Shown: positions 2,640-48,431 of the stretch, piece after piece | How the letters are laid out: each line of letters starts with the position of its first letter | Numbering within the stretch: the first letter of the stretch is position 1 | Assembly (NCBI RefSeq): GCF_964188315.1 | Contig: NC_135659.1 | Coordinates: 71,548,001-71,612,000 of the forward strand | Length of the DNA stretch: 64,000 nucleotides | Source: Podarcis muralis | Lineage: Eukaryota | Direction: 5' to 3' | The notes under the pieces: generated by a model | Databases searched by the model: none | Told to the model about the DNA's origin: nothing | The model's input: only the letters and a program-made list of their open reading frames with translations | Made by a program: the position numbers and the translations under genes

Positions 2640-3774
2640 TAGTCCATTGTGCTGTTTATTTTCGCTACTGGTATCTCTCCAAGGTCTTAGGCATAAGCCT
2701 TTCCAAAAACCCTTTAAGTTGGAGGTATTAGGTATTGAACCTTTGCTCTTCTACATGCAAAGCATGTGTTCCGCCAGTGCTGGGGTACAGGCTCCATTTG
2801 GTGTGCATTTAAGTTATGTTTTGCAAAAATAACTGCTTAGAAATGACTTGCTTGAAAATGGATCTGTTGCCATACTGACCTAGAGCAGAACTTGCAAGAT
2901 TTGTGAAATGCTGCTGTTGGGCACTGTAGCAATTTCCCAGAGGAAACCACGAGGCTTGGATTCCTTTGAACAAACGTAGCCCACCTCTTACTGAGTCAAT
3001 AAGGGCAAGATAATGGCAAGTAAAGACAAACAGAGATTGGAGTTGTAGCAGAGTAGACTCAATTCATCTACATGCCCTTTTGGATCTGAGTAAGAGGCAG
3101 CAGCAGATCAAGTCTTTTGTATTTTAATGCTTCCATAATTTTACTGGGCAAACATTGAAATTTCCATTGGGTGCAGAATTAAGTATCCTGAGAATCTCAG
3201 CTTTTGAAAGAAGCTTATTTCTGGCCCTTGTGACTGTGAAAATAGGCATGAAAGTGTGGGCAATGCTAAGTAAAATCTCAGAAGCCAAGTAGGTGGGGGA
3301 CAGAAAGGCCAGGGTTTCATTACCCTCCATGGCTCCATTCTCGTATGACCAACAGAAGCAGAATAGAATATGCAAAGTAAGCAAATATATGCAAGTGATT
3401 GTTAATTTGCATAGATGTCATGGAATTGATCATTTTCTTGCAGAATTTGAATTACCTGTGGCTTGTTGGTTTGTTTATTTTTTGCTGTTTTTGACGGTCC
3501 TGCACATAGGCAATTCTGCATAAGTTCTTTCTAGTTCAGGCCTTGGTGGTGAGAGTGAACTGCAGCTTGCTCTGCTTGAAATGATTCCTTTGAGGAGTGG
3601 GGCCCCTTTAGCTTTTAATTGCTGTCTAGTTTACTATATAATGTTGAGTTGACCAATCTTGCAGAGAGCCAGGTTTAAGCTGGTGTTGCATTACACATAA
3701 TGCAGGCTGAAATGGAGAGAAAACCCATCTCTTTGCCTTGGAGAACAGAGCTAGTGATGGGATCTATAGAACCC

Positions 3775-8396: not shown

Positions 8397-8639
8397 CGTG
8401 GGTAGGCAAACTAAGGCCTGGGGGCCAGATCCGGCCCAATCGCCTTCTAAATCCAGCCCTCGGATGGTCCGGGAATCAGCATGTTTTTACATGAGTAGAA
8501 CGTGTCCTTTTATTTAAAATGCATCTATGGGTTATTTGTGGGGCATAGGAATTCGTTCACCCCCCCATATAGTCCAGCCCCCCACAAGGTCTGAGGGACA
8601 GTAGACTAGCCCCTTGCTGAAAATGTTTGCTGACCCCTG
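8397..8639 (-). mobile_element. hAT MITE family A, reverse orientation
   Basis: Reverse complement of the 16913 and 50464 copies; 8-bp flanks ATTTAGCC / ATTTAGTT. Confidence 0.88.
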
Positions 8640-15004: not shown

Positions 15005-15203
15005 TATTTTTATATGTTTTATTACAGATATTTTGTGTGTTTTAAATTCTATTTTCCCTCCCTGATTAATTGCGGGGGGTTATTGGGTTGTTCTTGTTTT
15101 TATTTTGATTATGTATTTTGTGATTTTATATTGTGATTTTATCCTGTGAGCTGCCCTAAGATCTGTGGGTATAGGGCAGTATATAAATTTAAATAATAAT
15201 AAT
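15005..15203 (+). mobile_element. L2-type LINE 3' end fragment
   Basis: T-rich 3' UTR, then TGTGAGCTGCCCTAAGATC...GGGCAGTATATAAAT and an (AAT)n tail. Confidence 0.5.
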
Positions 15204-16912
15204 AGTTCTTTGCCCTGACTTAGAATTGCTGCTAATGGGCAGTTTGGTTCTACTGCAGTATCTTGCCTTCTCTCAAAGTCTTCAGTTCTCTTTGCAGATA
15301 CATGGGGGTTTGTCCCTAATCATGTGAATGGCTAACAGACTTGCAACAGGCTCTTATTGACAATTTAATTTCCAATATGCAATTATAAATGTGGGTATAC
15401 AACAGTATGAAGAAAGGCTGGTTTATACATAGGGAACACACAGCCATTTCCTTGACCACAGCCATGGTGACAGGCTGCTGGAACCCCTTTCGTACACTTT
15501 TAATTTTTTATTCCTGAAGTTCTGTATCCACTTGCACAGCTGTATGGAGAAATGTTAGTGGGTGCAAGCGGACCTGTAAATCCCTGCAGTAATGCCTAGG
15601 ACAAATTTCAGAACAGAGCAAATGGCCGCAAGGGCAGCTTAGAAGCCTCAGCCCTCCGTAACAATACTGGATAGGACTTGCAGCTTTTCCCTTTGCCTAT
15701 TGTTCTCTAGGCAGCCTGTCTGCCCATCCACACAGCAGGCAGTACTAATGGGCATGAGATTGGTTTCTGAGCAGTCTGTGTGCATGATCTGAATAGCAAG
15801 TGAAAAGAAGTGCAGTAGCTGTCAGTGGGAGATGGGTGATGAAGGCGAGGAGAGGGTTGTCCTGTGGCCAGCATGCCAGACTGGAGTCACATGATGTGTG
15901 TACACAGAGACCCGAACAGTTGGTGTTGCATACAGATGACTTGGGTGGTGTGTGTGTACACAAACACACACACAGAGGGAGGGAGGGAGAGAGTGTAGTA
16001 GCATCTTTGTTGTGAAAGTGAAGGACTGGAACACATTGCAGCCCAGTTTTTCTTTCTGCTGCCATGCCTTCCTCTTCTTCCACCCCTGGAATATATCTTG
16101 AGAAATGAGAATAGAACTCATCGGCTTTCTGGATCACATTGGAAAGCTCTTCAGTAGGTTCCCCAAGGCATTGCTATAGCTCCAGAATGATGTGCGGTCT
16201 TGTTTAAAAAGCATCTAATTTCTCAGTGTGGTATATAATACTCCTAAGCATTGTGGCTGAAGCAAAGCCAGGAAACTGGAAGAGCAAGGCAAGAGGAGGA
16301 AGATCTTAAAATCCAAATTGCTGCTGAACGTCTGATGCCTCCTTAGGATCAGGTGGAGTAAAGTGGAGCTTTATAATGCTGCTGGGCTTTCGCAAGAGTG
16401 TTGTGTTAAGTTTCATACTTCTTAGTTAGCAGCCACAGTTCTAGGAGTATTATATCCCACATTGACAATTTATATCTTGGAGAGAAGGCTATTGATTCTG
16501 TGGCATTCTGGAGCAGAACCATATCTTGCACCATTAGAATCTGTTTTGTATTCTAGGATGAGTGTTCCATAGTTCACAGACCAGGATGCTGTTAATACTG
16601 ATTTTCTCCACAGAGCTCCGTTTTTGTAAGGATGTGCTGGTGCTGTGGGTGAATTGCCTTTTCCCCGCCTGCTGTTGGTTAGCACCTCTTAACCATGTAT
16701 TTACAGTTCTGTGTCTTGTCAACTGCTTCCTTGTGTGCACATGCTGGGATTGCATCTGGGGGTTGAAAGCAGTTGATTTCTGAAACTGTTCATTCTGAAT
16801 TACCAGTGTGTGTGCAGGCAAAATTGTAAGTCTCTATGCTCCATCTAGATCCTCTCCCCACCTCCACTTCCTAAATCCCCAAATTTATGAAAGGCAGTAC
16901 TTTTGTCTAAGA

Positions 16913-31096: not shown

Positions 31097-32326
31097 GAGG
31101 ACAGCGCAGACCTCAAGTGTCAATTGCATTTCGCTAAGGAGGAATCTGCTCTGATGTGCAAGAAACTGACCAAGTTAGCCAAAGAGAACGACAGTATGAA
31201 GGAGGAGCTGACGAAGTACAGATCCTTGTATGGGGACCTGGAGAGCTCCCTCTCCATAGAGGAACTGGCTGACTCCCCTCATTCCAGAGAGGCAGAGCTG
31301 AAAGTCCACCTGAAGCTTGTAGAGGAAGAAGCCAACATCTTGAGCCGGAGGATAGTAGAGCTTGAGGTTGAGAACCGAGGGCTGAGGGCAGAGATGGAAG
31401 ACATGAGGGGCCAAGGAGACAAAGAACTCTTAGGGCAAGACATCCGGTTTGCCTTCTCCATGACAAACTGCGGGGACTCTGGGGACAGTGTGGTGGAGCT
31501 TAGGCGGCACTTGCAGTTTGTGGAGGAGGAGGCAGAACTGCTGAGGCGCTCGCTGATGGAGTTGGAGGAGCAGAACAAGCTCCTCATGAATGAGCTCAAT
31601 AAGTACAAGTCAGACCATGACCTGGACATCACTCTGTCTGAGGACAGCTGCTCAGTGATTAGTGAGACCTCCCAAGAAGAACTGGCCACGGCCAAGGTCC
31701 AAATCAGTGAGCTGAGTGGCAAGGTTAAGAAACTCCAGTATGAGAACCGTGTCCTGCTCTCCAACTTGCAGCGCTGTGACCTTGCTTCCTGCCAGACCAC
31801 TCGGCCCATGCTGGAGACGGATGCTGAGGCTGGTGACTCTGCCCAGTGCATCCCAACGTCGCTTTGGAGAGAGGTGCCCATTGGGGGAGAGAATGATGCC
31901 AAGGAGAGAGCACCTGGCAATGGCTTTAGCAAGTCGCATGAAAGCAGCCCCTGCAGGCTTCTCAAGTCCAAGGACTTTGAGACCCTCCTTGACATCAGGG
32001 ACCAGGCTGCGCTTGTCAGCAAAGCCATTGATGTCCTGATCTCTGATGCCAATGGCTTCACCTCCAGTCTCAAGCTCTGCATGGACAACGACTGTGCAGA
32101 GCTGGTGCTGAGCGAAGCCATGGATAATGAGAGTATGACTGACTCTAAGCTGATCAGTGCCATTTTGATGAGGCTTGGGGTCCTTCAGCAGGAGCTAAAC
32201 ACCTTCATGAGGAAGGTGGACTACATTGGAGACCACCTGAAAGACCAGAAGGACTCCTTGCCAAGCGCCAGCTCCCAGGATTCCACAAAAGAGGCTCTGC
32301 AGAAAACCCATGGCTCTGAATTCCAG
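31097..32326 (+). CDS. MTCL2: MTCL2 large coiled-coil exon (EDSADLKCQLHFAKEES...HGSEFQ, 410 aa)
   Basis: Acceptor ttatgctAG|GAG, donor CAG|gtgagg; 1230 nt, phase 0/0; overlaps ORF 31124..32356; SOGA-domain coiled coils. Confidence 0.97.
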
Positions 32327-33115
32327 GTGAGGCTTTTCCTGAGATGTCAACAGTGACTCCCTGGCAGTGATTATTGCTTTATTTGCCCATGCTGTTTTTT
32401 CCTGCTTTAACAAATCAGAACCTGGCCCTGTTAATGTAACTTCCCTTTTCTGCCTCTCTTTTCTGAAATGACAACTAACAACTGGCTCACTGCATGGAAC
32501 TGTGGCTAGTGATGAGGTAGGACTCTGGTTTAGTGGAGTGTGCATGAGGCAGGAGGAATATTGCTTTGAGAAGTGGAAACCACATTACAGCTGCTGCTGA
32601 AGAATTATTTAGTACCAGCTGCAGTCCATCATCATCTGGGGGACACTAAGTTGGAGAAGACCGGTCTAGGACAACAGCAGCTAGTGGAGCATCACTGCAC
32701 ACCTTGCCTCCTGGCAATTGTATTGCTACTGCTTGCAGGTAGTGGCATTGTGTGGGCTGCATCGGCAACTGCACCGCATTGGTGCTACCGATGTGCCCAC
32801 ACAGTACCCTTCCAGGTCATCCCTTCTGGTAAATGGTACTGCTGCTGTTGCCAGGAGGCCAGGCACATGCTGCTGCCATTCCCTATGGCTGCTCCTGATC
32901 TAAGGTAAGACCTAAGAAAGGGAAGGGGATCTGGGGAGGGGTCGCAACCTCCTGAAGCACACTCCAGTTTTTCAGAGTTCTATTTTTGTGCATGCTCCTG
33001 GCCCCCCCTCCCTTCCTCCCTCAACTAGCCCCACCCCAGGCACTGCATGGCACCATAACTGGTGTTTGCACATTTTTTCCCTCTCTCTCTTTTCCCCCCT
33101 CCCCAAACAATCCAG

Positions 33116-33217
33116 CCCACGTGTCTGCTCATTTTGTGTCTCCTTTTGTTTTCCACTTTGTCTTCTGCCACGGTAGTGAAGTTCCTCCTCCTCTTCATCC
33201 TTTTTGTTGTCTTGTAG
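33116..33217 (+). CDS. MTCL2: Putative alternative terminal exon encoding a hydrophobic membrane-anchor tail (PTCLLILCLLLFSTLSSATVVKFLLLFILFVVL*)
   Basis: A long pyrimidine tract and AG-free zone end in tccAG|CCC. In frame with the phase-0 donor at 32326; 33 codons plus TAG; one charged residue; resembles my recollection of the SOGA3 C-terminal tail. No transcript evidence is available here. Confidence 0.7.
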   Translation, partial: PTCLLILCLLLFSTLSSATVVKFLLLFILFVVL

Positions 33218-33310
33218 CTCTTATTGTTCCTGAGACCCATTGTTTTGTTTGTTTTTTCTTTTCTTTTCTGCTCTTTTGGTTTGTTCTCATTAACTTGCCC
33301 ATGCATGCAG

Positions 33311-33484
33311 CAGTCTGACTTTAGGGAGCCCCCCGACTGGGACATCACGGAGAGCAGGACCTCTGATCTCTACCGCAGTAGCAGCAGCAACAGCACCGCC
33401 ACCATGGATGTGGATCCCAACATGGAACTTGACCGGAGCTACAAGTCATATCAACCAGAGGAGAAGGACTCCTATGTGTCTGAG
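33311..33484 (+). CDS. MTCL2: MTCL2 coding exon (QSDFREPPDW...DSYVSE)
   Basis: Acceptor catgcAG|CAG (tandem CAGCAG, so the start may be 33314), donor GAG|gtaggc; 174 nt, phase 0/0. Confidence 0.92.
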
Positions 33485-33813
33485 GTAGGCGTCAAAGTAT
33501 GTGATTATGTTCCCAAAGGGAGGCAAGAAGGCTGGAGACTCCGGGGAGAATAAGTTGACTGCAGAAATACTAGATCAACATATTTCATGTGGGTGGAAAA
33601 AAGAATGGCATGGCCCATATACAAATCTTGTGTTACCTATCCCAGTGTCACATGACAAGTTAGAAACAGGTGGACATGGCTGGAGACTGGGGAAATAGCC
33701 TAATAGGCCTAATTTGACCTACAGATCGGAGGTTCCTCACCATGACAACAGGATGTTACATACAGGCCAAGGTCACTCCCTGCAAGAAGTTGGCTGTTCT
33801 TCCATGGGCCTTT

Positions 33814-33819
33814 AATAAA
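33814..33819 (+). terminator. Candidate intronic polyadenylation signal (AATAAA)
   Basis: First AATAAA I found downstream of the putative hydrophobic-tail exon; ATTAAA at 33862 and a GU-rich tract near 33847-33860 follow. Confidence 0.35.
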
Positions 33820-33880
33820 AATATATTGCAAGGATGACCTACCTGACTGTTGTTGGCTTTGATTAAACTATTCCCCGCAG

Positions 33881-34006
33881 ATCAAAGAATTGCAACTGGT
33901 CCTTTCAGAGGCTAATGAGAGCTTGAGGGGCCAACAAGAACAGCTCTCCCAGGAGAGGCAACTGAGGAAAGAGGAAGCAGAGAACTTCACCCAGAAAATC
34001 TGCCAG
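33881..34006 (+). CDS. MTCL2: MTCL2 coding exon (IKELQLVLSEANESLR...TQKICQ)
   Basis: Acceptor ccccgcAG|ATC, donor CAG|gtcagt; 126 nt, phase 0/0. Confidence 0.95.
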
Positions 34007-34369
34007 GTCAGTGAGATTTGCCTGGAGCCACTCTCCAGGCTGGAAGCTGAGACATGCAACAAGAGTACAGGAGGGACTAAAGGCACAGAGCTTAATCCCT
34101 CCCATTACTTCAGGCACATCCTAGTGCAGCATTGTATGAAAGCACAAAGCAGCTGCTACCTAGTTTGGCTGCCAGGAAAGAGGCAAATGCTTCCATATGA
34201 CCCCTTAACATGCTGAGAGTACATTATCCATAACAAACATGATCTGAAAACAAACCTGAACTCGGCAGTCCTCTAGCAGCCAAGCAGAGTCATCTATGGG
34301 TTCTCTAGCTTTCATATAAAGATAGCCATTCTTTGTGAGACCTCTTCTGTCTCTCAAATCTCTCTCAAA

Positions 34370-35411: not shown

Positions 35412-35642
35412 TTGAAGGAAGATCACCAGAAGGCCCTCTTGAGGCGAGAATTTGAGCTGCAGAGCCTGAATCTTCAGAGGAGGCTGGAGCAAAAGTTCTG
35501 GAGCCAGGAGAAGAACCTTCTGGTGCAGGAATCCCAGCAGTTCAAGCAAAATTTCTTGCTCCTTTTCATGAAGCTCAAGTGGTTTCTGAAGCATTGGAGG
35601 CAGGGAAAGATCCTACAAAATGAGGGCAATGACTTCTTAGAG
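35412..35642 (+). CDS. MTCL2: MTCL2 coding exon (LKEDHQKALLRREFELQSL...GNDFLE)
   Basis: Acceptor ctctgtcAG|TTG, donor GAG|gtatgg; 231 nt, phase 0/0; contains the conserved FLLLFMKLKWFLKHWRQG. Confidence 0.96.
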
Positions 35643-46745: not shown

Positions 46746-48025
46746 TTCTGCATCAGCAATAGCAATTAATCTATCATATTCGAAAGGGGAATATCATAAT
46801 TTGTTTTCTGTTTGTGGCAGTTTACGGTTAGTATGCTATGGGAACAAACTATTTCTCACGCAGTTCTCCGGCCTTGATCTCCATTTGTTATGGGAGTCAT
46901 TCCTTCATGTTATGGAACCTTGTCCATTATCTCCCTGTTTCCAGACAGCTGGTTGCTGCATCAGCAATGTGCTGACCCTTGAGAAAACTGAGTATTTTTC
47001 TCCTTAAAGTAACTCCTTCCATAAAAAGGGCTAAAGCCCAGATCATACTCCTGCAAGCAGACTAATGATGTGCAACATCTAAAAAGCTGACCTTTATAAC
47101 TCTCTCATTGGGTCCCAGACTCATGCGTATTAGTATTAAGTCCTGCTAGAAATAGGTAATTATTTAAAGCAGCAGTGCTCAGAAATGCAAGAACCACTGC
47201 TTGAATGAGAACAATTCCAATTAAAGGCAAGCACAGTGCCCCTTCAGGCTTACCCAGAGTCAGATTGGGACTTGCACTTCACTTGTGCAGTCACCGCAGA
47301 TCATGGGGTTGGCCAGCTACACAGTCTCTGGCTGTAATTGATAGCTGTGCAGTCCAGGAGGCTGTCAAAGATGAAGCTGGAGATCATGGGGCTGGCCAGT
47401 CTCCCGATTCTGGCTGCACAGAGCTGTCAAACGTAGCTATGGATTGCCAGCACCATGGTTGCCTGCTGCCCTGATCTCCTTTCCTCCACTGCCTGTTTCT
47501 TCCCCACCACACTTCCCTAAAATAAAGATACAGTTCCCAGAGTTCCCTGTGAAGAGGGAATGCTTGCTAATCCACACTGAGAACTGTAGCTCTGTGAGGG
47601 GAATAGGGGTCCCCTAACAACTCCCAGCACCTCTAACAAACTACAGTTCCCAGAATTGTTTGTGGGAAGCCATGAGTGTTTAAAGAGGCATCATAGTACT
47701 TTATTTGTGTGGTGTGAATGTAGCCCAAGTCTGATTTTTACCAAATGGAAAAAGGGGAACATAACCAAGTTTTTAGTTACGTTGACATACCTTGTTCTGA
47801 CCGTGTTAAATATTGGCTGCTTTGGAGAAAGGATATGAAGTGCTCCATCTCTCTCCAATTCCTAACCAGTAATTCTACCATGAATATATTCCATTGAACC
47901 TGTCCACCTTTCCAGCACAGCAAGCCAAACAGTCTCCCATAACCAATCTTAGACAAAGGCAAGGAAGCTGCGGCCTTTGATTTAATTGGGTTCCTTGACA
48001 CAGCCACTCCCTTTGTCCCACACAG

Positions 48026-48277
48026 CTGGAATCCAAGCCTGGGAAAGGCCTGACAGAGCGAGCGCTCTCTGACTGGAAGACAGCTCTGAAGAGGGAGAGG
48101 GAGGAGCACCAGCACCTTCTGGCTGAGTCGTACAGCGCCGTCATGGACTTGACCAAGCAGCTGCAGATCAGCGAGAAGAACTGGGACCAGGAGAAGCTGG
48201 AGCTCCTGGACCGATTCAAGGATGAACGGCAGCAGGCAGAGCAGCAAGTGAAGGAGCTGCAGAACAAAATAAACCAG
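48026..48277 (+). CDS. MTCL2: MTCL2 coding exon (LESKPGKGLTERALSDWK...QNKINQ)
   Basis: Acceptor cccacacAG|CTG, donor CAG|gtgaga; 252 nt, phase 0/0; coiled coil. Confidence 0.95.
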
Positions 48278-48431
48278 GTGAGAACGGAATACATTGTGTG
48301 GGTGCAACTCGCCCTCCAAAGTCTCAGTGAGCATTTCAGCAAGTGTGAATATAATGTGCATACCCTTAGCAGAATCAATATAGGATGGCAGCAATGGATG
48401 TTCCTGCATGAGCATAAGTGTGGGTATAGAC

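What the first reader, a model, noticed from the sequence alone, without database searches (positions are those of the whole stretch)
33040..33217. Hidden alternative last exon converting MTCL2/SOGA1 into a putative membrane-anchored coiled-coil isoform
Seen: an AG-free stretch of about 70 nt with a branch-point-like CATAAC and a long pyrimidine tract ends in tccAG at 33114-33115. The next 102 nt, in frame with the phase-0 donor at 32326, read PTCLLILCLLLFSTLSSATVVKFLLLFILFVVL-TAG: two hydrophobic blocks split by an S/T stretch and a single Lys. It is too short for the ORF track and looks like intronic pyrimidine tract. Recalled, needs confirming: the paralog SOGA3/MTCL3 ends in a same-length tail of the form PxxLLILxLxLFSxLSxxTxxKxxxLFxLFxVL-stop, which this matches at about 19 of 33 positions. 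Established: full-length MTCL1/2 are microtubule-crosslinking, Golgi-associated coiled-coil proteins with a C-terminal microtubule-binding region. Inference: one gene encodes both the long soluble form and a short tail-anchored, golgin-like form (559 window-encoded aa plus 33, plus the upstream N-terminus) lacking that region, i.e. a retained ancestral SOGA3-type architecture. An internal donor ACG|gtagtg after 33172 could instead give a 57-nt in-frame hydrophobic insert. I cannot tell whether this isoform is already annotated.
Basis: partly seen in the sequence, partly recalled or inferred. Interest (0 to 1): 0.85.

Follow-up and report, generated by a model that had tools for sequence, protein, structure and literature searches.

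The report
Conserved membrane-anchor tail in MTCL2 intron
A 33-codon hydrophobic reading frame hidden in an intron of a lizard's MTCL2/SOGA1 gene is a true, anciently conserved copy of the membrane-anchor tail that ends the paralog SOGA3, so the gene can probably make a short membrane-anchored form as well as the known soluble microtubule crosslinker, although its use in this species is not yet shown.

Summary
After an AG at 33114-33115, window 33116-33214 encodes 33 hydrophobic residues followed by TAG, in phase with the donor at 32326.

The recalled SOGA3 match is real. It is 20/33 identical, ungapped, the same length, with the stop in the same place, and 0 of 200,000 shuffles reach its score.

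The same module sits 70-190 nt upstream of the next exon (or its position) in four other settings:
- two other sauropsid SOGA1 loci;
- fish SOGA1;
- pheasant MTCL1;
- tinamou SOGA3.

Intron flanks are conserved even between paralogs. In a fish SOGA1 ortholog, two spliced transcript contigs (933 and 950 aa) join the upstream exon to exactly this acceptor and end in the tail. One contig runs on through the stop and spacer into the next exon. That suggests an alternative upstream 3' splice site rather than a free-standing last exon.

Weak points:
- In this species, three RNA contig sets show only the constitutive 32326-to-33311 joint.
- The SOGA1 tail evolves faster (pN/pS 0.37-0.55) than the MTCL1 and SOGA3 tails (0.07).
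- The flanks are as conserved as the codons.
- The stop would precede later exon junctions, so unproductive splicing is a live rival.
- A placental mammal locus lacks the module.

No tetrapod SOGA1 protein found carries the tail.

The parts
31097..32326 (+). Exon A of MTCL2/SOGA1 (coiled-coil, Pfam SOGA). It has a phase-0 donor, CAG|gtgagg, after 32326.
   Evidence: Pfam. tblastn of named MTCL2 proteins. The donor is used in RNA contigs. The 5' boundary is approximate.
33040..33115 (+). Conserved intronic block upstream of the tail. It holds TGCATG at 33044-49, a branch-point-like CATAAC at 33054-59, a pyrimidine tract, and the acceptor AG at 33114-15.
   Evidence: 90-91% identical to the sauropsid loci L001 and L003, against 60-66% for the early intron. 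It can be aligned even with pheasant MTCL1. The AG-free zone runs from 33040.
33116..33217 (+). Thirty-three-codon hydrophobic tail plus TAG, homologous to the SOGA3/MTCL3 and MTCL1 C-terminal tail.
   Evidence: AlphaFold2 predicts helices 2-14 and 17-32. Mean Kyte-Doolittle hydropathy is 2.4.
33218..33310 (+). Conserved spacer between the tail stop and exon B. It holds TTAAC at 33290-94, TGCATG at 33302-07, and the constitutive acceptor cag at 33308-10.
   Evidence: 85-91% identical in L001 and L003. The cattaac..tgcccatgcatgca..cag stretch is conserved as far as fish SOGA1.
33311..33484 (+). Constitutive exon B. If the acceptor at 33116 is used, exon B would be extended at its 5' end to 33116.
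   Evidence: Joints 32326->33311 and 33484->33881 appear in three RNA contig sets. Fish contig L012 runs from the tail through the spacer into exon B.
33881..34006 (+). Constitutive exon C.
   Evidence: Joint seen. tblastn.
33814..33819 (+). AATAAA in the intron after exon B. It is a possible species-specific poly(A) signal for a composite terminal exon.
   Evidence: RNA contig 4 of run X1 ends at 33843. The signal is not conserved in L001 or L003, and no link to the tail acceptor has been shown.

Best explanation
Window 33116-33217 is the MTCL2/SOGA1 copy of the MTCL family's ancestral C-terminal membrane-anchor module. This is the same 33-residue tail that ends SOGA3/MTCL3.

The intron after exon A has two acceptors. 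The constitutive one is at 33311. The upstream one is at 33116 and has its own conserved branch-point-like CATAAC and pyrimidine tract.

Using the upstream acceptor extends exon B by 195 nt and appends 33 hydrophobic residues and a stop. The product keeps the N-terminal coiled-coil half of the protein, lacks the C-terminal microtubule-binding region, and carries a C-terminal hydrophobic anchor. It would insert post-translationally into ER/Golgi membranes, like a tail-anchored golgin.

Shown: the homology, the conserved position, frame and stop, the conserved splice signals, and splicing into this acceptor in fish SOGA1 mRNA.

Inferred: use of the acceptor in this lizard, translation of the tail, and membrane insertion.
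For: Tail homology:
- The tail matches SOGA3 and MTCL1 tails at 20-21 of 33 positions with no gaps. Nine columns are invariant, and 0 of 200,000 shuffles reach the score.
- The profile search returned SOGA-family tails plus one low-complexity repeat protein.

Orthologs:
- L001, a sauropsid, is 29/33 identical.
- L003, a neognath bird, is 23/33 identical.
- Both keep the CAG acceptor, 33 codons, the stop, and a spacer of about 95 nt.

Paralogs:
- Pheasant MTCL1 (L006) has the tail 88 nt upstream of its next exon.
- Tinamou SOGA3 (L009) has the tail at 35455-35556.
- The MTCL1 and SOGA3 tails differ by 25 synonymous and 5 nonsynonymous changes, pN/pS 0.07. The peptide is therefore under protein-level selection in the family.

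Fish SOGA1-clade evidence (tree):
- Transcript contigs L012 and L013 encode complete 933- and 950-aa proteins.
- They are spliced from the upstream exon to exactly the homologous acceptor and end in the tail.

Module conservation:
- The roughly 270-nt module is 82-92% identical between lizard and the other sauropsids.
- The early intron is 60-66% identical and exon A 78-82%.

RNA presence:
- Thirteen runs labelled RNA (label guessed) of this organism hold words of 33116-33310.
Against: - In this species, contigs of three RNA runs show only the 32326->33311 joint.
- The one piece covering the tail (run X2, depth 4.2 against 52) starts at 33013, upstream of the acceptor, so it is unspliced. The raw-read run gave no reads.
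- Within SOGA1, the tail's pN/pS is 0.37-0.55 on only 18 changes. The noncoding flanks are as conserved as the codons. Nucleotide-level constraint alone could therefore keep the frame open.
- The stop lies 267 nt upstream of the exon B donor. A transcript that is fully spliced downstream would be a predicted target of nonsense-mediated mRNA decay (NMD).
- No named tetrapod SOGA1 protein up to 1027 aa ends in the tail.
- A placental mammal locus (L004) lacks the module.
- A 33-residue hydrophobic run with a predicted break at 15-16 is not a textbook single-span anchor.
Confidence: 0.62

Rival explanations
1. Unproductive-splicing switch. The module is kept as a regulatory 'poison' 3' splice site. 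Using 33116 brings in a premature stop, and the transcript is degraded by nonsense-mediated mRNA decay (NMD). This tunes MTCL2 levels. On this reading the SOGA1 tail peptide has no function of its own in tetrapods.
For: The stop at 33215-17 lies 267 nt before the exon B donor. The flanking intron is as conserved as the codons, or more so, which is typical of conserved poison exons. SOGA1-tail pN/pS is only mildly below 1. Five plus-strand TGCATG motifs lie in this 985-nt intron, two of them next to the branch-point regions. No junction appears in steady-state RNA contigs.
Against: The same peptide is the real C-terminus of SOGA3 and is under strong protein-level selection in MTCL1 and SOGA3 (pN/pS 0.07). 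Fish SOGA1 tail-spliced mRNAs are abundant enough to assemble as complete coding sequences in two runs. All replacements in sauropsid SOGA1 tails stay hydrophobic or small, and there are no indels over 33 codons.
Confidence: 0.22
2. Unused relic. The acceptor is no longer used in tetrapod SOGA1. The sequence survives because it overlaps branch-point, pyrimidine-tract and enhancer signals for the constitutive exon B acceptor.
For: No junction was seen. Mammals appear to have lost the whole module without losing the gene. The tail diverges much faster in SOGA1 than in the paralogs.
Against: Exon B has its own branch-like TTAAC and pyrimidine tract inside the 93-nt spacer. This does not explain conservation of the block 33040-33115, the CAG acceptor, and an intact 33-codon frame with a fixed stop from fish to lizard and bird.
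Confidence: 0.1
3. In-frame 57-nt cassette (33116-33172) using the donor ACG|gtagtg. This would insert 19 hydrophobic residues into the long protein.
For: A GT follows 33172 in the window, L001, L003 and pheasant MTCL1. Some automatic gene models use parts of the tail as a cassette (P0067 from a bat, P0170 from a fish).
Against: The GT is a Val codon. It is absent in fish SOGA1 and in SOGA3. The donor is weak. Conservation continues to the stop and beyond. The fish transcripts read through to the stop.
Confidence: 0.03
4. Chance open frame produced by translating a pyrimidine tract.
For: T/C-rich sequence rarely contains stops. The ORF is too short to be significant by itself.
Against: The shuffle test gave 0 of 200,000. 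The profile search is specific apart from one repeat protein. Position and stop are conserved in orthologs and paralogs.
Confidence: 0.01

Closest known systems
SOGA3 / MTCL3 C-terminal hydrophobic tail
   Same: It has the same 33 residues in length, the same junction (..Q|P after a CAG acceptor), and the same stop after ..VL. It is 20/33 identical, with invariant L7, L11, S13, L15, S16, K22, L26, L29 and L33. The host-gene family is the same.
   Different: In SOGA3 the tail is the annotated constitutive C-terminus, and the C-terminal half of the ancestral gene is called as a separate downstream gene. In tinamou locus L009 that gene carries PF14818 and starts at 48391. Here the tail is optional inside an intact long gene, it is unannotated, and it evolves faster.
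MTCL1 (SOGA2) tail module
   Same: Identical architecture: donor, then about 775 nt of intron, then the tail, then 88 nt, then the next exon. The intron flanks are alignable. It is also an alternative to the long microtubule-binding form.
   Different: The MTCL1 tail is almost identical to the SOGA3 tail (pN/pS 0.07). It occurs in a few partial bird annotations (P0044, P0048, P0053). No paper found describes it.
Fish SOGA1 tail-ending transcripts and models (P0168, P0169, P0060)
   Same: They belong to the orthologous clade and use the homologous acceptor. The tail has 34 residues sharing LFSTLS and ILF.VL. Conserved cattaac..tgcccatgcatgca..cag lies before exon B.
   Different: The spacer is about 190 nt and the stop is TGA. 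Transcript evidence exists there but not here. Only 4 proteins among 5.8 billion clusters carry this tail.
Tail-anchored golgins, especially CASP from the CUX1 gene (from my own knowledge)
   Same: This is a works-like comparison. A long coiled-coil is anchored by a C-terminal hydrophobic segment. In CASP/CUX1, alternative splicing of one gene gives either a membrane-anchored Golgi protein or a functionally different soluble protein.
   Different: There is no sequence relationship. Localisation and insertion are untested here. The hydrophobic run is 33 residues with a polar centre, which is longer than a typical tail-anchor span.

Membership tests
MTCL/SOGA-family C-terminal tail module (SOGA3 type) | The host gene is a SOGA/MTCL family member. 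| tested here: met
   Pfam PF11365 at 7.5e-59. The window falls in the starred SOGA1 clade.
MTCL/SOGA-family C-terminal tail module (SOGA3 type) | A 33-residue tail that aligns without gaps, keeps the conserved residues, and has the stop directly after ..VL. | tested here: met
   Alignment A1 has 9 invariant columns and 58-64% identity to paralog tails. Shuffle test.
MTCL/SOGA-family C-terminal tail module (SOGA3 type) | Located in the intron after the exon A equivalent, with a phase-0 junction onto a CAG acceptor, shortly upstream of the next exon. | tested here: met
   Window, L001 and L003, MTCL1 locus L006, fish locus L008.
MTCL/SOGA-family C-terminal tail module (SOGA3 type) | Spliced into mRNA. 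| tested here: inconclusive
   Not seen in contigs of three RNA runs of this species, and contigs drop rare forms. Seen in fish SOGA1 transcripts L012 and L013.
Tail-anchored membrane protein | A hydrophobic segment within the last ~40 residues, with no sizeable domain after it. | tested here: met
   All 33 terminal residues have mean hydropathy 2.4, and the last residue is hydrophobic.
Tail-anchored membrane protein | A single membrane span of roughly 18-25 residues. | tested here: inconclusive
   AlphaFold2 gives two helices, 2-14 and 17-32, at pLDDT 73. The polar S13, S16 and K22 are invariant. A kinked span or a hairpin are both possible.
Tail-anchored membrane protein | No N-terminal signal peptide; post-translational insertion by a dedicated tail-anchor insertion pathway (the GET/TRC40 or EMC machinery). 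| not testable with these tools
   The N-terminus lies outside the window. Insertion needs experiments.
Conserved poison exon / unproductive (NMD-coupled) splicing | A premature stop more than 50-55 nt upstream of a later exon junction. | tested here: met
   The stop ends at 33217 and the exon B donor is at 33484. This holds only if downstream splicing proceeds.
Conserved poison exon / unproductive (NMD-coupled) splicing | The isoform is stabilised when nonsense-mediated mRNA decay is blocked. | not testable with these tools
   Needs an experiment.

The most novel reading that the evidence does not exclude
All three vertebrate MTCL paralogs have kept one switch module since before their duplication. 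The module consists of an upstream 3' splice site, a 33-codon membrane anchor, and conserved intronic flanks with UGCAUG motifs. The switch toggles each gene between a membrane-anchored golgin-like form and a soluble microtubule-crosslinking form. SOGA3 plus KIAA0408 would be the fission product of this switch. The anchored isoforms of MTCL1 and MTCL2 would contribute to their Golgi association and to tissue-specific control, for example by RBFOX.
Probability: 0.4. Interest if true: 0.75.

Novelty: new member of a known kind. Interest (0 to 1): 0.6.

Why it matters
MTCL1 and MTCL2 are studied as soluble proteins that link microtubules to the Golgi. The MTCL2 paper read here discusses no membrane-anchored isoform and no third paralog.

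A conserved, unannotated anchor module inside both genes would give a direct physical route to membranes. It would also supply a natural dominant-negative or scaffold form that lacks the microtubule-binding end. It would explain why SOGA3 and KIAA0408 sit next to each other as two genes.

The finding also shows that gene predictors mishandle this site: some use the tail as a cassette, and some read into the intron. Its apparent loss from placental SOGA1 limits biomedical reach. MTCL1 keeps the module in the pheasant locus, and mammalian MTCL1 has a further conserved hydrophobic read-through tail.

Tried and rejected
- **RNA evidence in this species.** Read laying on 32000-34200 with X1, X2, X5 and X22 gave only constitutive joints, and the raw-read run had zero reads. 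The second run search shows presence of the stretch in RNA contigs but cannot separate splicing from intron retention.
- **Unmatched letters.** The 24 unmatched letters at the 5' end of X2's contig match nothing in the window.
- **My recollection about mammalian short isoforms.** I thought the ~1016-aa mammalian SOGA1 isoform might be the tail form. It is not: pig, marmot and other ~1015-aa proteins end in a different alternative C-terminus.
- **Loci that gave nothing.** The Crypturellus contig L002 ends about 25 nt before the exon. L007, L010 and L011 gave no usable downstream sequence or no module. P0102 is not on record.
- **Intronic RNA gene.** No Rfam family explains the conserved block.
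- **Literature.** Searches for SOGA3, MTCL1 or MTCL2 transmembrane or tail-anchored isoforms found nothing relevant.
- **Earlier findings.** No earlier finding of this scan bears on the site.
- **Rejected readings.** I rejected the 57-nt cassette and the chance-ORF readings, as set out under the rival explanations.

Full report
**What is in the window**

Searches confirm the description. An AG sits at 33114-33115. Thirty-three hydrophobic codons follow at 33116-33214, then TAG at 33215-33217. The frame is in phase with the phase-0 donor after 32326.

The stretch from 33040 to 33113 is AG-free. It contains CATAAC at 33054-59 and a long pyrimidine tract.

The upstream exon, about 31097-32326, matches Pfam SOGA at 7.5e-59. 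It is 94.7% identical to the Podarcis muralis MTCL2 model P0154. The window is therefore from a lacertid-like lizard.

RNA contigs confirm the constitutive joints 32326->33311 and 33484->33881. The hidden frame thus ends only 93 nt upstream of the next exon, exon B (33311-33484).

**Is the SOGA3 resemblance real?**

Yes. Among the proteins returned for exon A, every full SOGA3 ends in a 33-residue tail that aligns without gaps to the window frame. So do three partial bird 'SOGA2' (MTCL1) proteins. Identity is 20-21 of 33, and nine columns are invariant (A1).

None of 200,000 composition-preserving shuffles reaches the observed score of 89; the best shuffle scored 64.

A profile of the tails searched against 1.84 billion representative proteins gave 22 hits. 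Twenty-one are tails of this family. The other, which was the top hit, is a repetitive low-complexity protein.

**Orthologs**

- **L001** holds the tail at 8503-8604. Its exon A is 85% identical to the window and is closest to tinamou, Podarcis and Naja sequences. The tail is 29/33 identical.
- **L003** holds the tail at 3469-3570. It is a neognath bird, 90-92% identical to pelican, sandgrouse and owl. The tail is 23/33 identical.
- Both keep the CAG acceptor, 33 codons, the stop, and exon B about 95 nt further on.
- The tinamou contig L002 matches the upstream block and then ends about 25 nt before the exon.
- A placental mammal locus, L004 (95% identical to pig and marmot), spans the whole intron. 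It has neither the tail nor the conserved flanks by tblastn, nhmmer or a protein profile.

**Paralogs**

- Pheasant MTCL1 (L006) has the donor at 15164, the tail at 15939-16040 and the next exon at 16129.
- Tinamou SOGA3 (L009) has the tail at 35455-35556. A separate called gene with PF14818, homologous to the window's exon at about 48020-48304, starts at 48391.
- The tree gives three well-supported clades, SOGA3, MTCL1 and SOGA1. Tail-bearing members occur in all three.
- The DNA flanks align even between SOGA1 and MTCL1: the TGCATG..CATAAC..GTGTTTGCA block, the pyrimidine tract, and the region before exon B.

**Transcript evidence**

In the fish SOGA1 clade, two Logan contigs encode complete proteins of 933 and 950 aa. 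These are L012 (SRR19345946) and L013 (SRR19345904).

Both are spliced relative to the goby genome locus L008. They join the upstream exon to exactly the homologous acceptor (..ADK|PFILPS..) and end in the tail.

L012 continues colinearly with the genome through the stop, the spacer and the conserved cattaac..catgcatgca..cag into the first bases of exon B. This favours, but does not prove, an alternative upstream 3' splice site that extends exon B rather than an independent terminal exon.

In this lizard the evidence is weak:
- Contigs from X1, X2 and X5 show only the constitutive joint.
- X2 has a low-depth piece (4.2 against 52) covering 33013-33309. It begins upstream of the acceptor, so it is unspliced.
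- The raw-read run X22 had no reads on the gene.
- Thirteen runs labelled RNA (label guessed) hold words of 33116-33310. This does not distinguish splicing from intron retention.

**Selection**

The MTCL1 and SOGA3 tails differ by 25 synonymous and 5 nonsynonymous changes, giving pN/pS 0.07. The peptide is clearly protein-constrained in the family.

Within SOGA1 the ratios are 0.37 (window against L001), 0.46 (window against L003) and 0.55 (L001 against L003). These rest on 8 synonymous and 10 nonsynonymous changes in total, so the evidence is only suggestive.

Between lizard and the other two sauropsids, identities compare as follows:

| Region | Identity |
|---|---|
| Upstream block | 90-91% |
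| Tail | 82-92% |
| Spacer | 85-91% |
| Exon A DNA | 78-82% |
| First 600 nt of the intron | 60-66% |

The whole module of roughly 270 nt is therefore under nucleotide-level constraint. That fits a regulated splice switch, but it also weakens the argument from the open frame alone.

**Mechanism proposed**

The intron has two acceptors, each with its own branch-like motif: CATAAC at 33054 and TTAAC at 33290.

Choosing 33116 yields the N-terminal coiled-coil half plus a 33-residue hydrophobic C-terminus, without the microtubule-binding end.

The tail is hydrophobic to its last residue, with mean hydropathy 2.4. AlphaFold2 gives helices 2-14 and 17-32 at pLDDT 73. With invariant S13, S16 and K22, it could be a kinked span or a hairpin.

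The stop lies 267 nt before the exon B donor. A fully spliced transcript would therefore be a predicted target of nonsense-mediated mRNA decay. An AATAAA at 33814, with an X1 contig ending at 33843, might give a composite last exon in this species. That signal is not conserved, and no link to the tail acceptor has been shown.

**Is it already annotated?**

I found no tetrapod SOGA1 protein carrying the tail.
- A search allowing lengths up to 1027 aa returned pig, marmot, dog, rabbit, owl, Podarcis and Naja isoforms with other C-termini.
- In the profile search, sauropsid SOGA1-type tails appear only as unspliced ORFs (P0129, P0135, P0136, P0141).
- The fish-type tail occurs in only four proteins of 523-1662 aa among 5.8 billion clusters: two Logan transcripts and two 'hypothetical protein' models. 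One of the models uses the tail as an internal cassette.
- The MTCL2 paper mentions no such isoform and no third paralog. Other literature searches were blank.
- These searches have length and clustering limits, so absence from all annotation is not proven.

**Verdict**

The observation and the homology claim are confirmed. The module is ancient, it is shared by all three paralogs, and it is spliced in fish SOGA1.

Whether this lizard makes the anchored protein is unproven. I put it at about 0.6. Unproductive splicing (about 0.2) and an unused relic (about 0.1) are the main rivals.

Noticed in passing
Proteins P0056, P0062, P0063, P0066, P0068, P0070-P0074, P0077, P0079, P0082, P0084, P0087, P0097, P0178 (not in the window): In mammalian MTCL1, reading through the homologous donor (..DLQ|) gives a conserved hydrophobic ending of 32-35 residues, VRGL..PPCSV.FFLLLAGIAAL.L.LLTAAW[F/L], followed by a stop. 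One such ORF is 962 aa on a 3.3-kb Logan contig. This may be a second, mammal-specific way to make a membrane-anchored short MTCL1.
   Followed up: partly
window 32491, 32541, 32989, 33044, 33302 (+ strand): Five plus-strand TGCATG (RBFOX-type) motifs lie in this 985-nt intron, against roughly 0.6 per kb per strand across the window. The one at 33044 sits next to the CATAAC and the one at 33302 lies between TTAAC and the exon B acceptor. The 33044 site is also present in L001, L003 and pheasant MTCL1. The 33302 site is present in L001 and fish SOGA1, and its GCATG core is kept in L003.
   Followed up: partly
window 33814-33843: An AATAAA lies in the intron after exon B, and an RNA contig of run X1 (33455-33843) ends 24 nt past it. 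This is possible intronic polyadenylation. The signal is absent in L001 and L003.
   Followed up: partly
L009:35455-54274 (Tinamus guttatus SOGA3 locus): The SOGA3 tail is followed about 13 kb downstream by a separately called gene with PF14818, homologous to the window's exon at about 48020-48304. SOGA3 plus this KIAA0408-like neighbour together mirror the single long MTCL1/MTCL2 gene. The annotated model P0103 skips the tail and uses doubtful low-complexity exons.
   Followed up: partly
P0154 (Podarcis muralis MTCL2 model) against window 32327-33400: The database model reads eight or nine codons into the intron (..EFQVRLFLRCQH) and then jumps into the middle of exon B. The junction at this site is therefore mis-modelled in the closest annotated relative.
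   Followed up: yes
window 33013 (run X2, contig 7): A 321-nt RNA contig covers 33013-33309. It carries 24 unmatched letters at its 5' end that occur nowhere in the window. It may be a chimera or an unknown upstream join.
   Followed up: partly
P0067 (bat MTCL1) and P0170 (Caranx SOGA1): Automatic gene models insert part of the tail as an internal cassette to avoid its stop. This shows how annotation pipelines hide the module.
   Followed up: yes
L004:1813-3807 (placental mammal SOGA1 intron): The whole tail module, including the conserved exon B acceptor region, is missing. The mammalian ~1015-aa short SOGA1 isoforms use an unrelated alternative C-terminus (..SQKLSLLFILAPPQPPPIL).
   Followed up: partly
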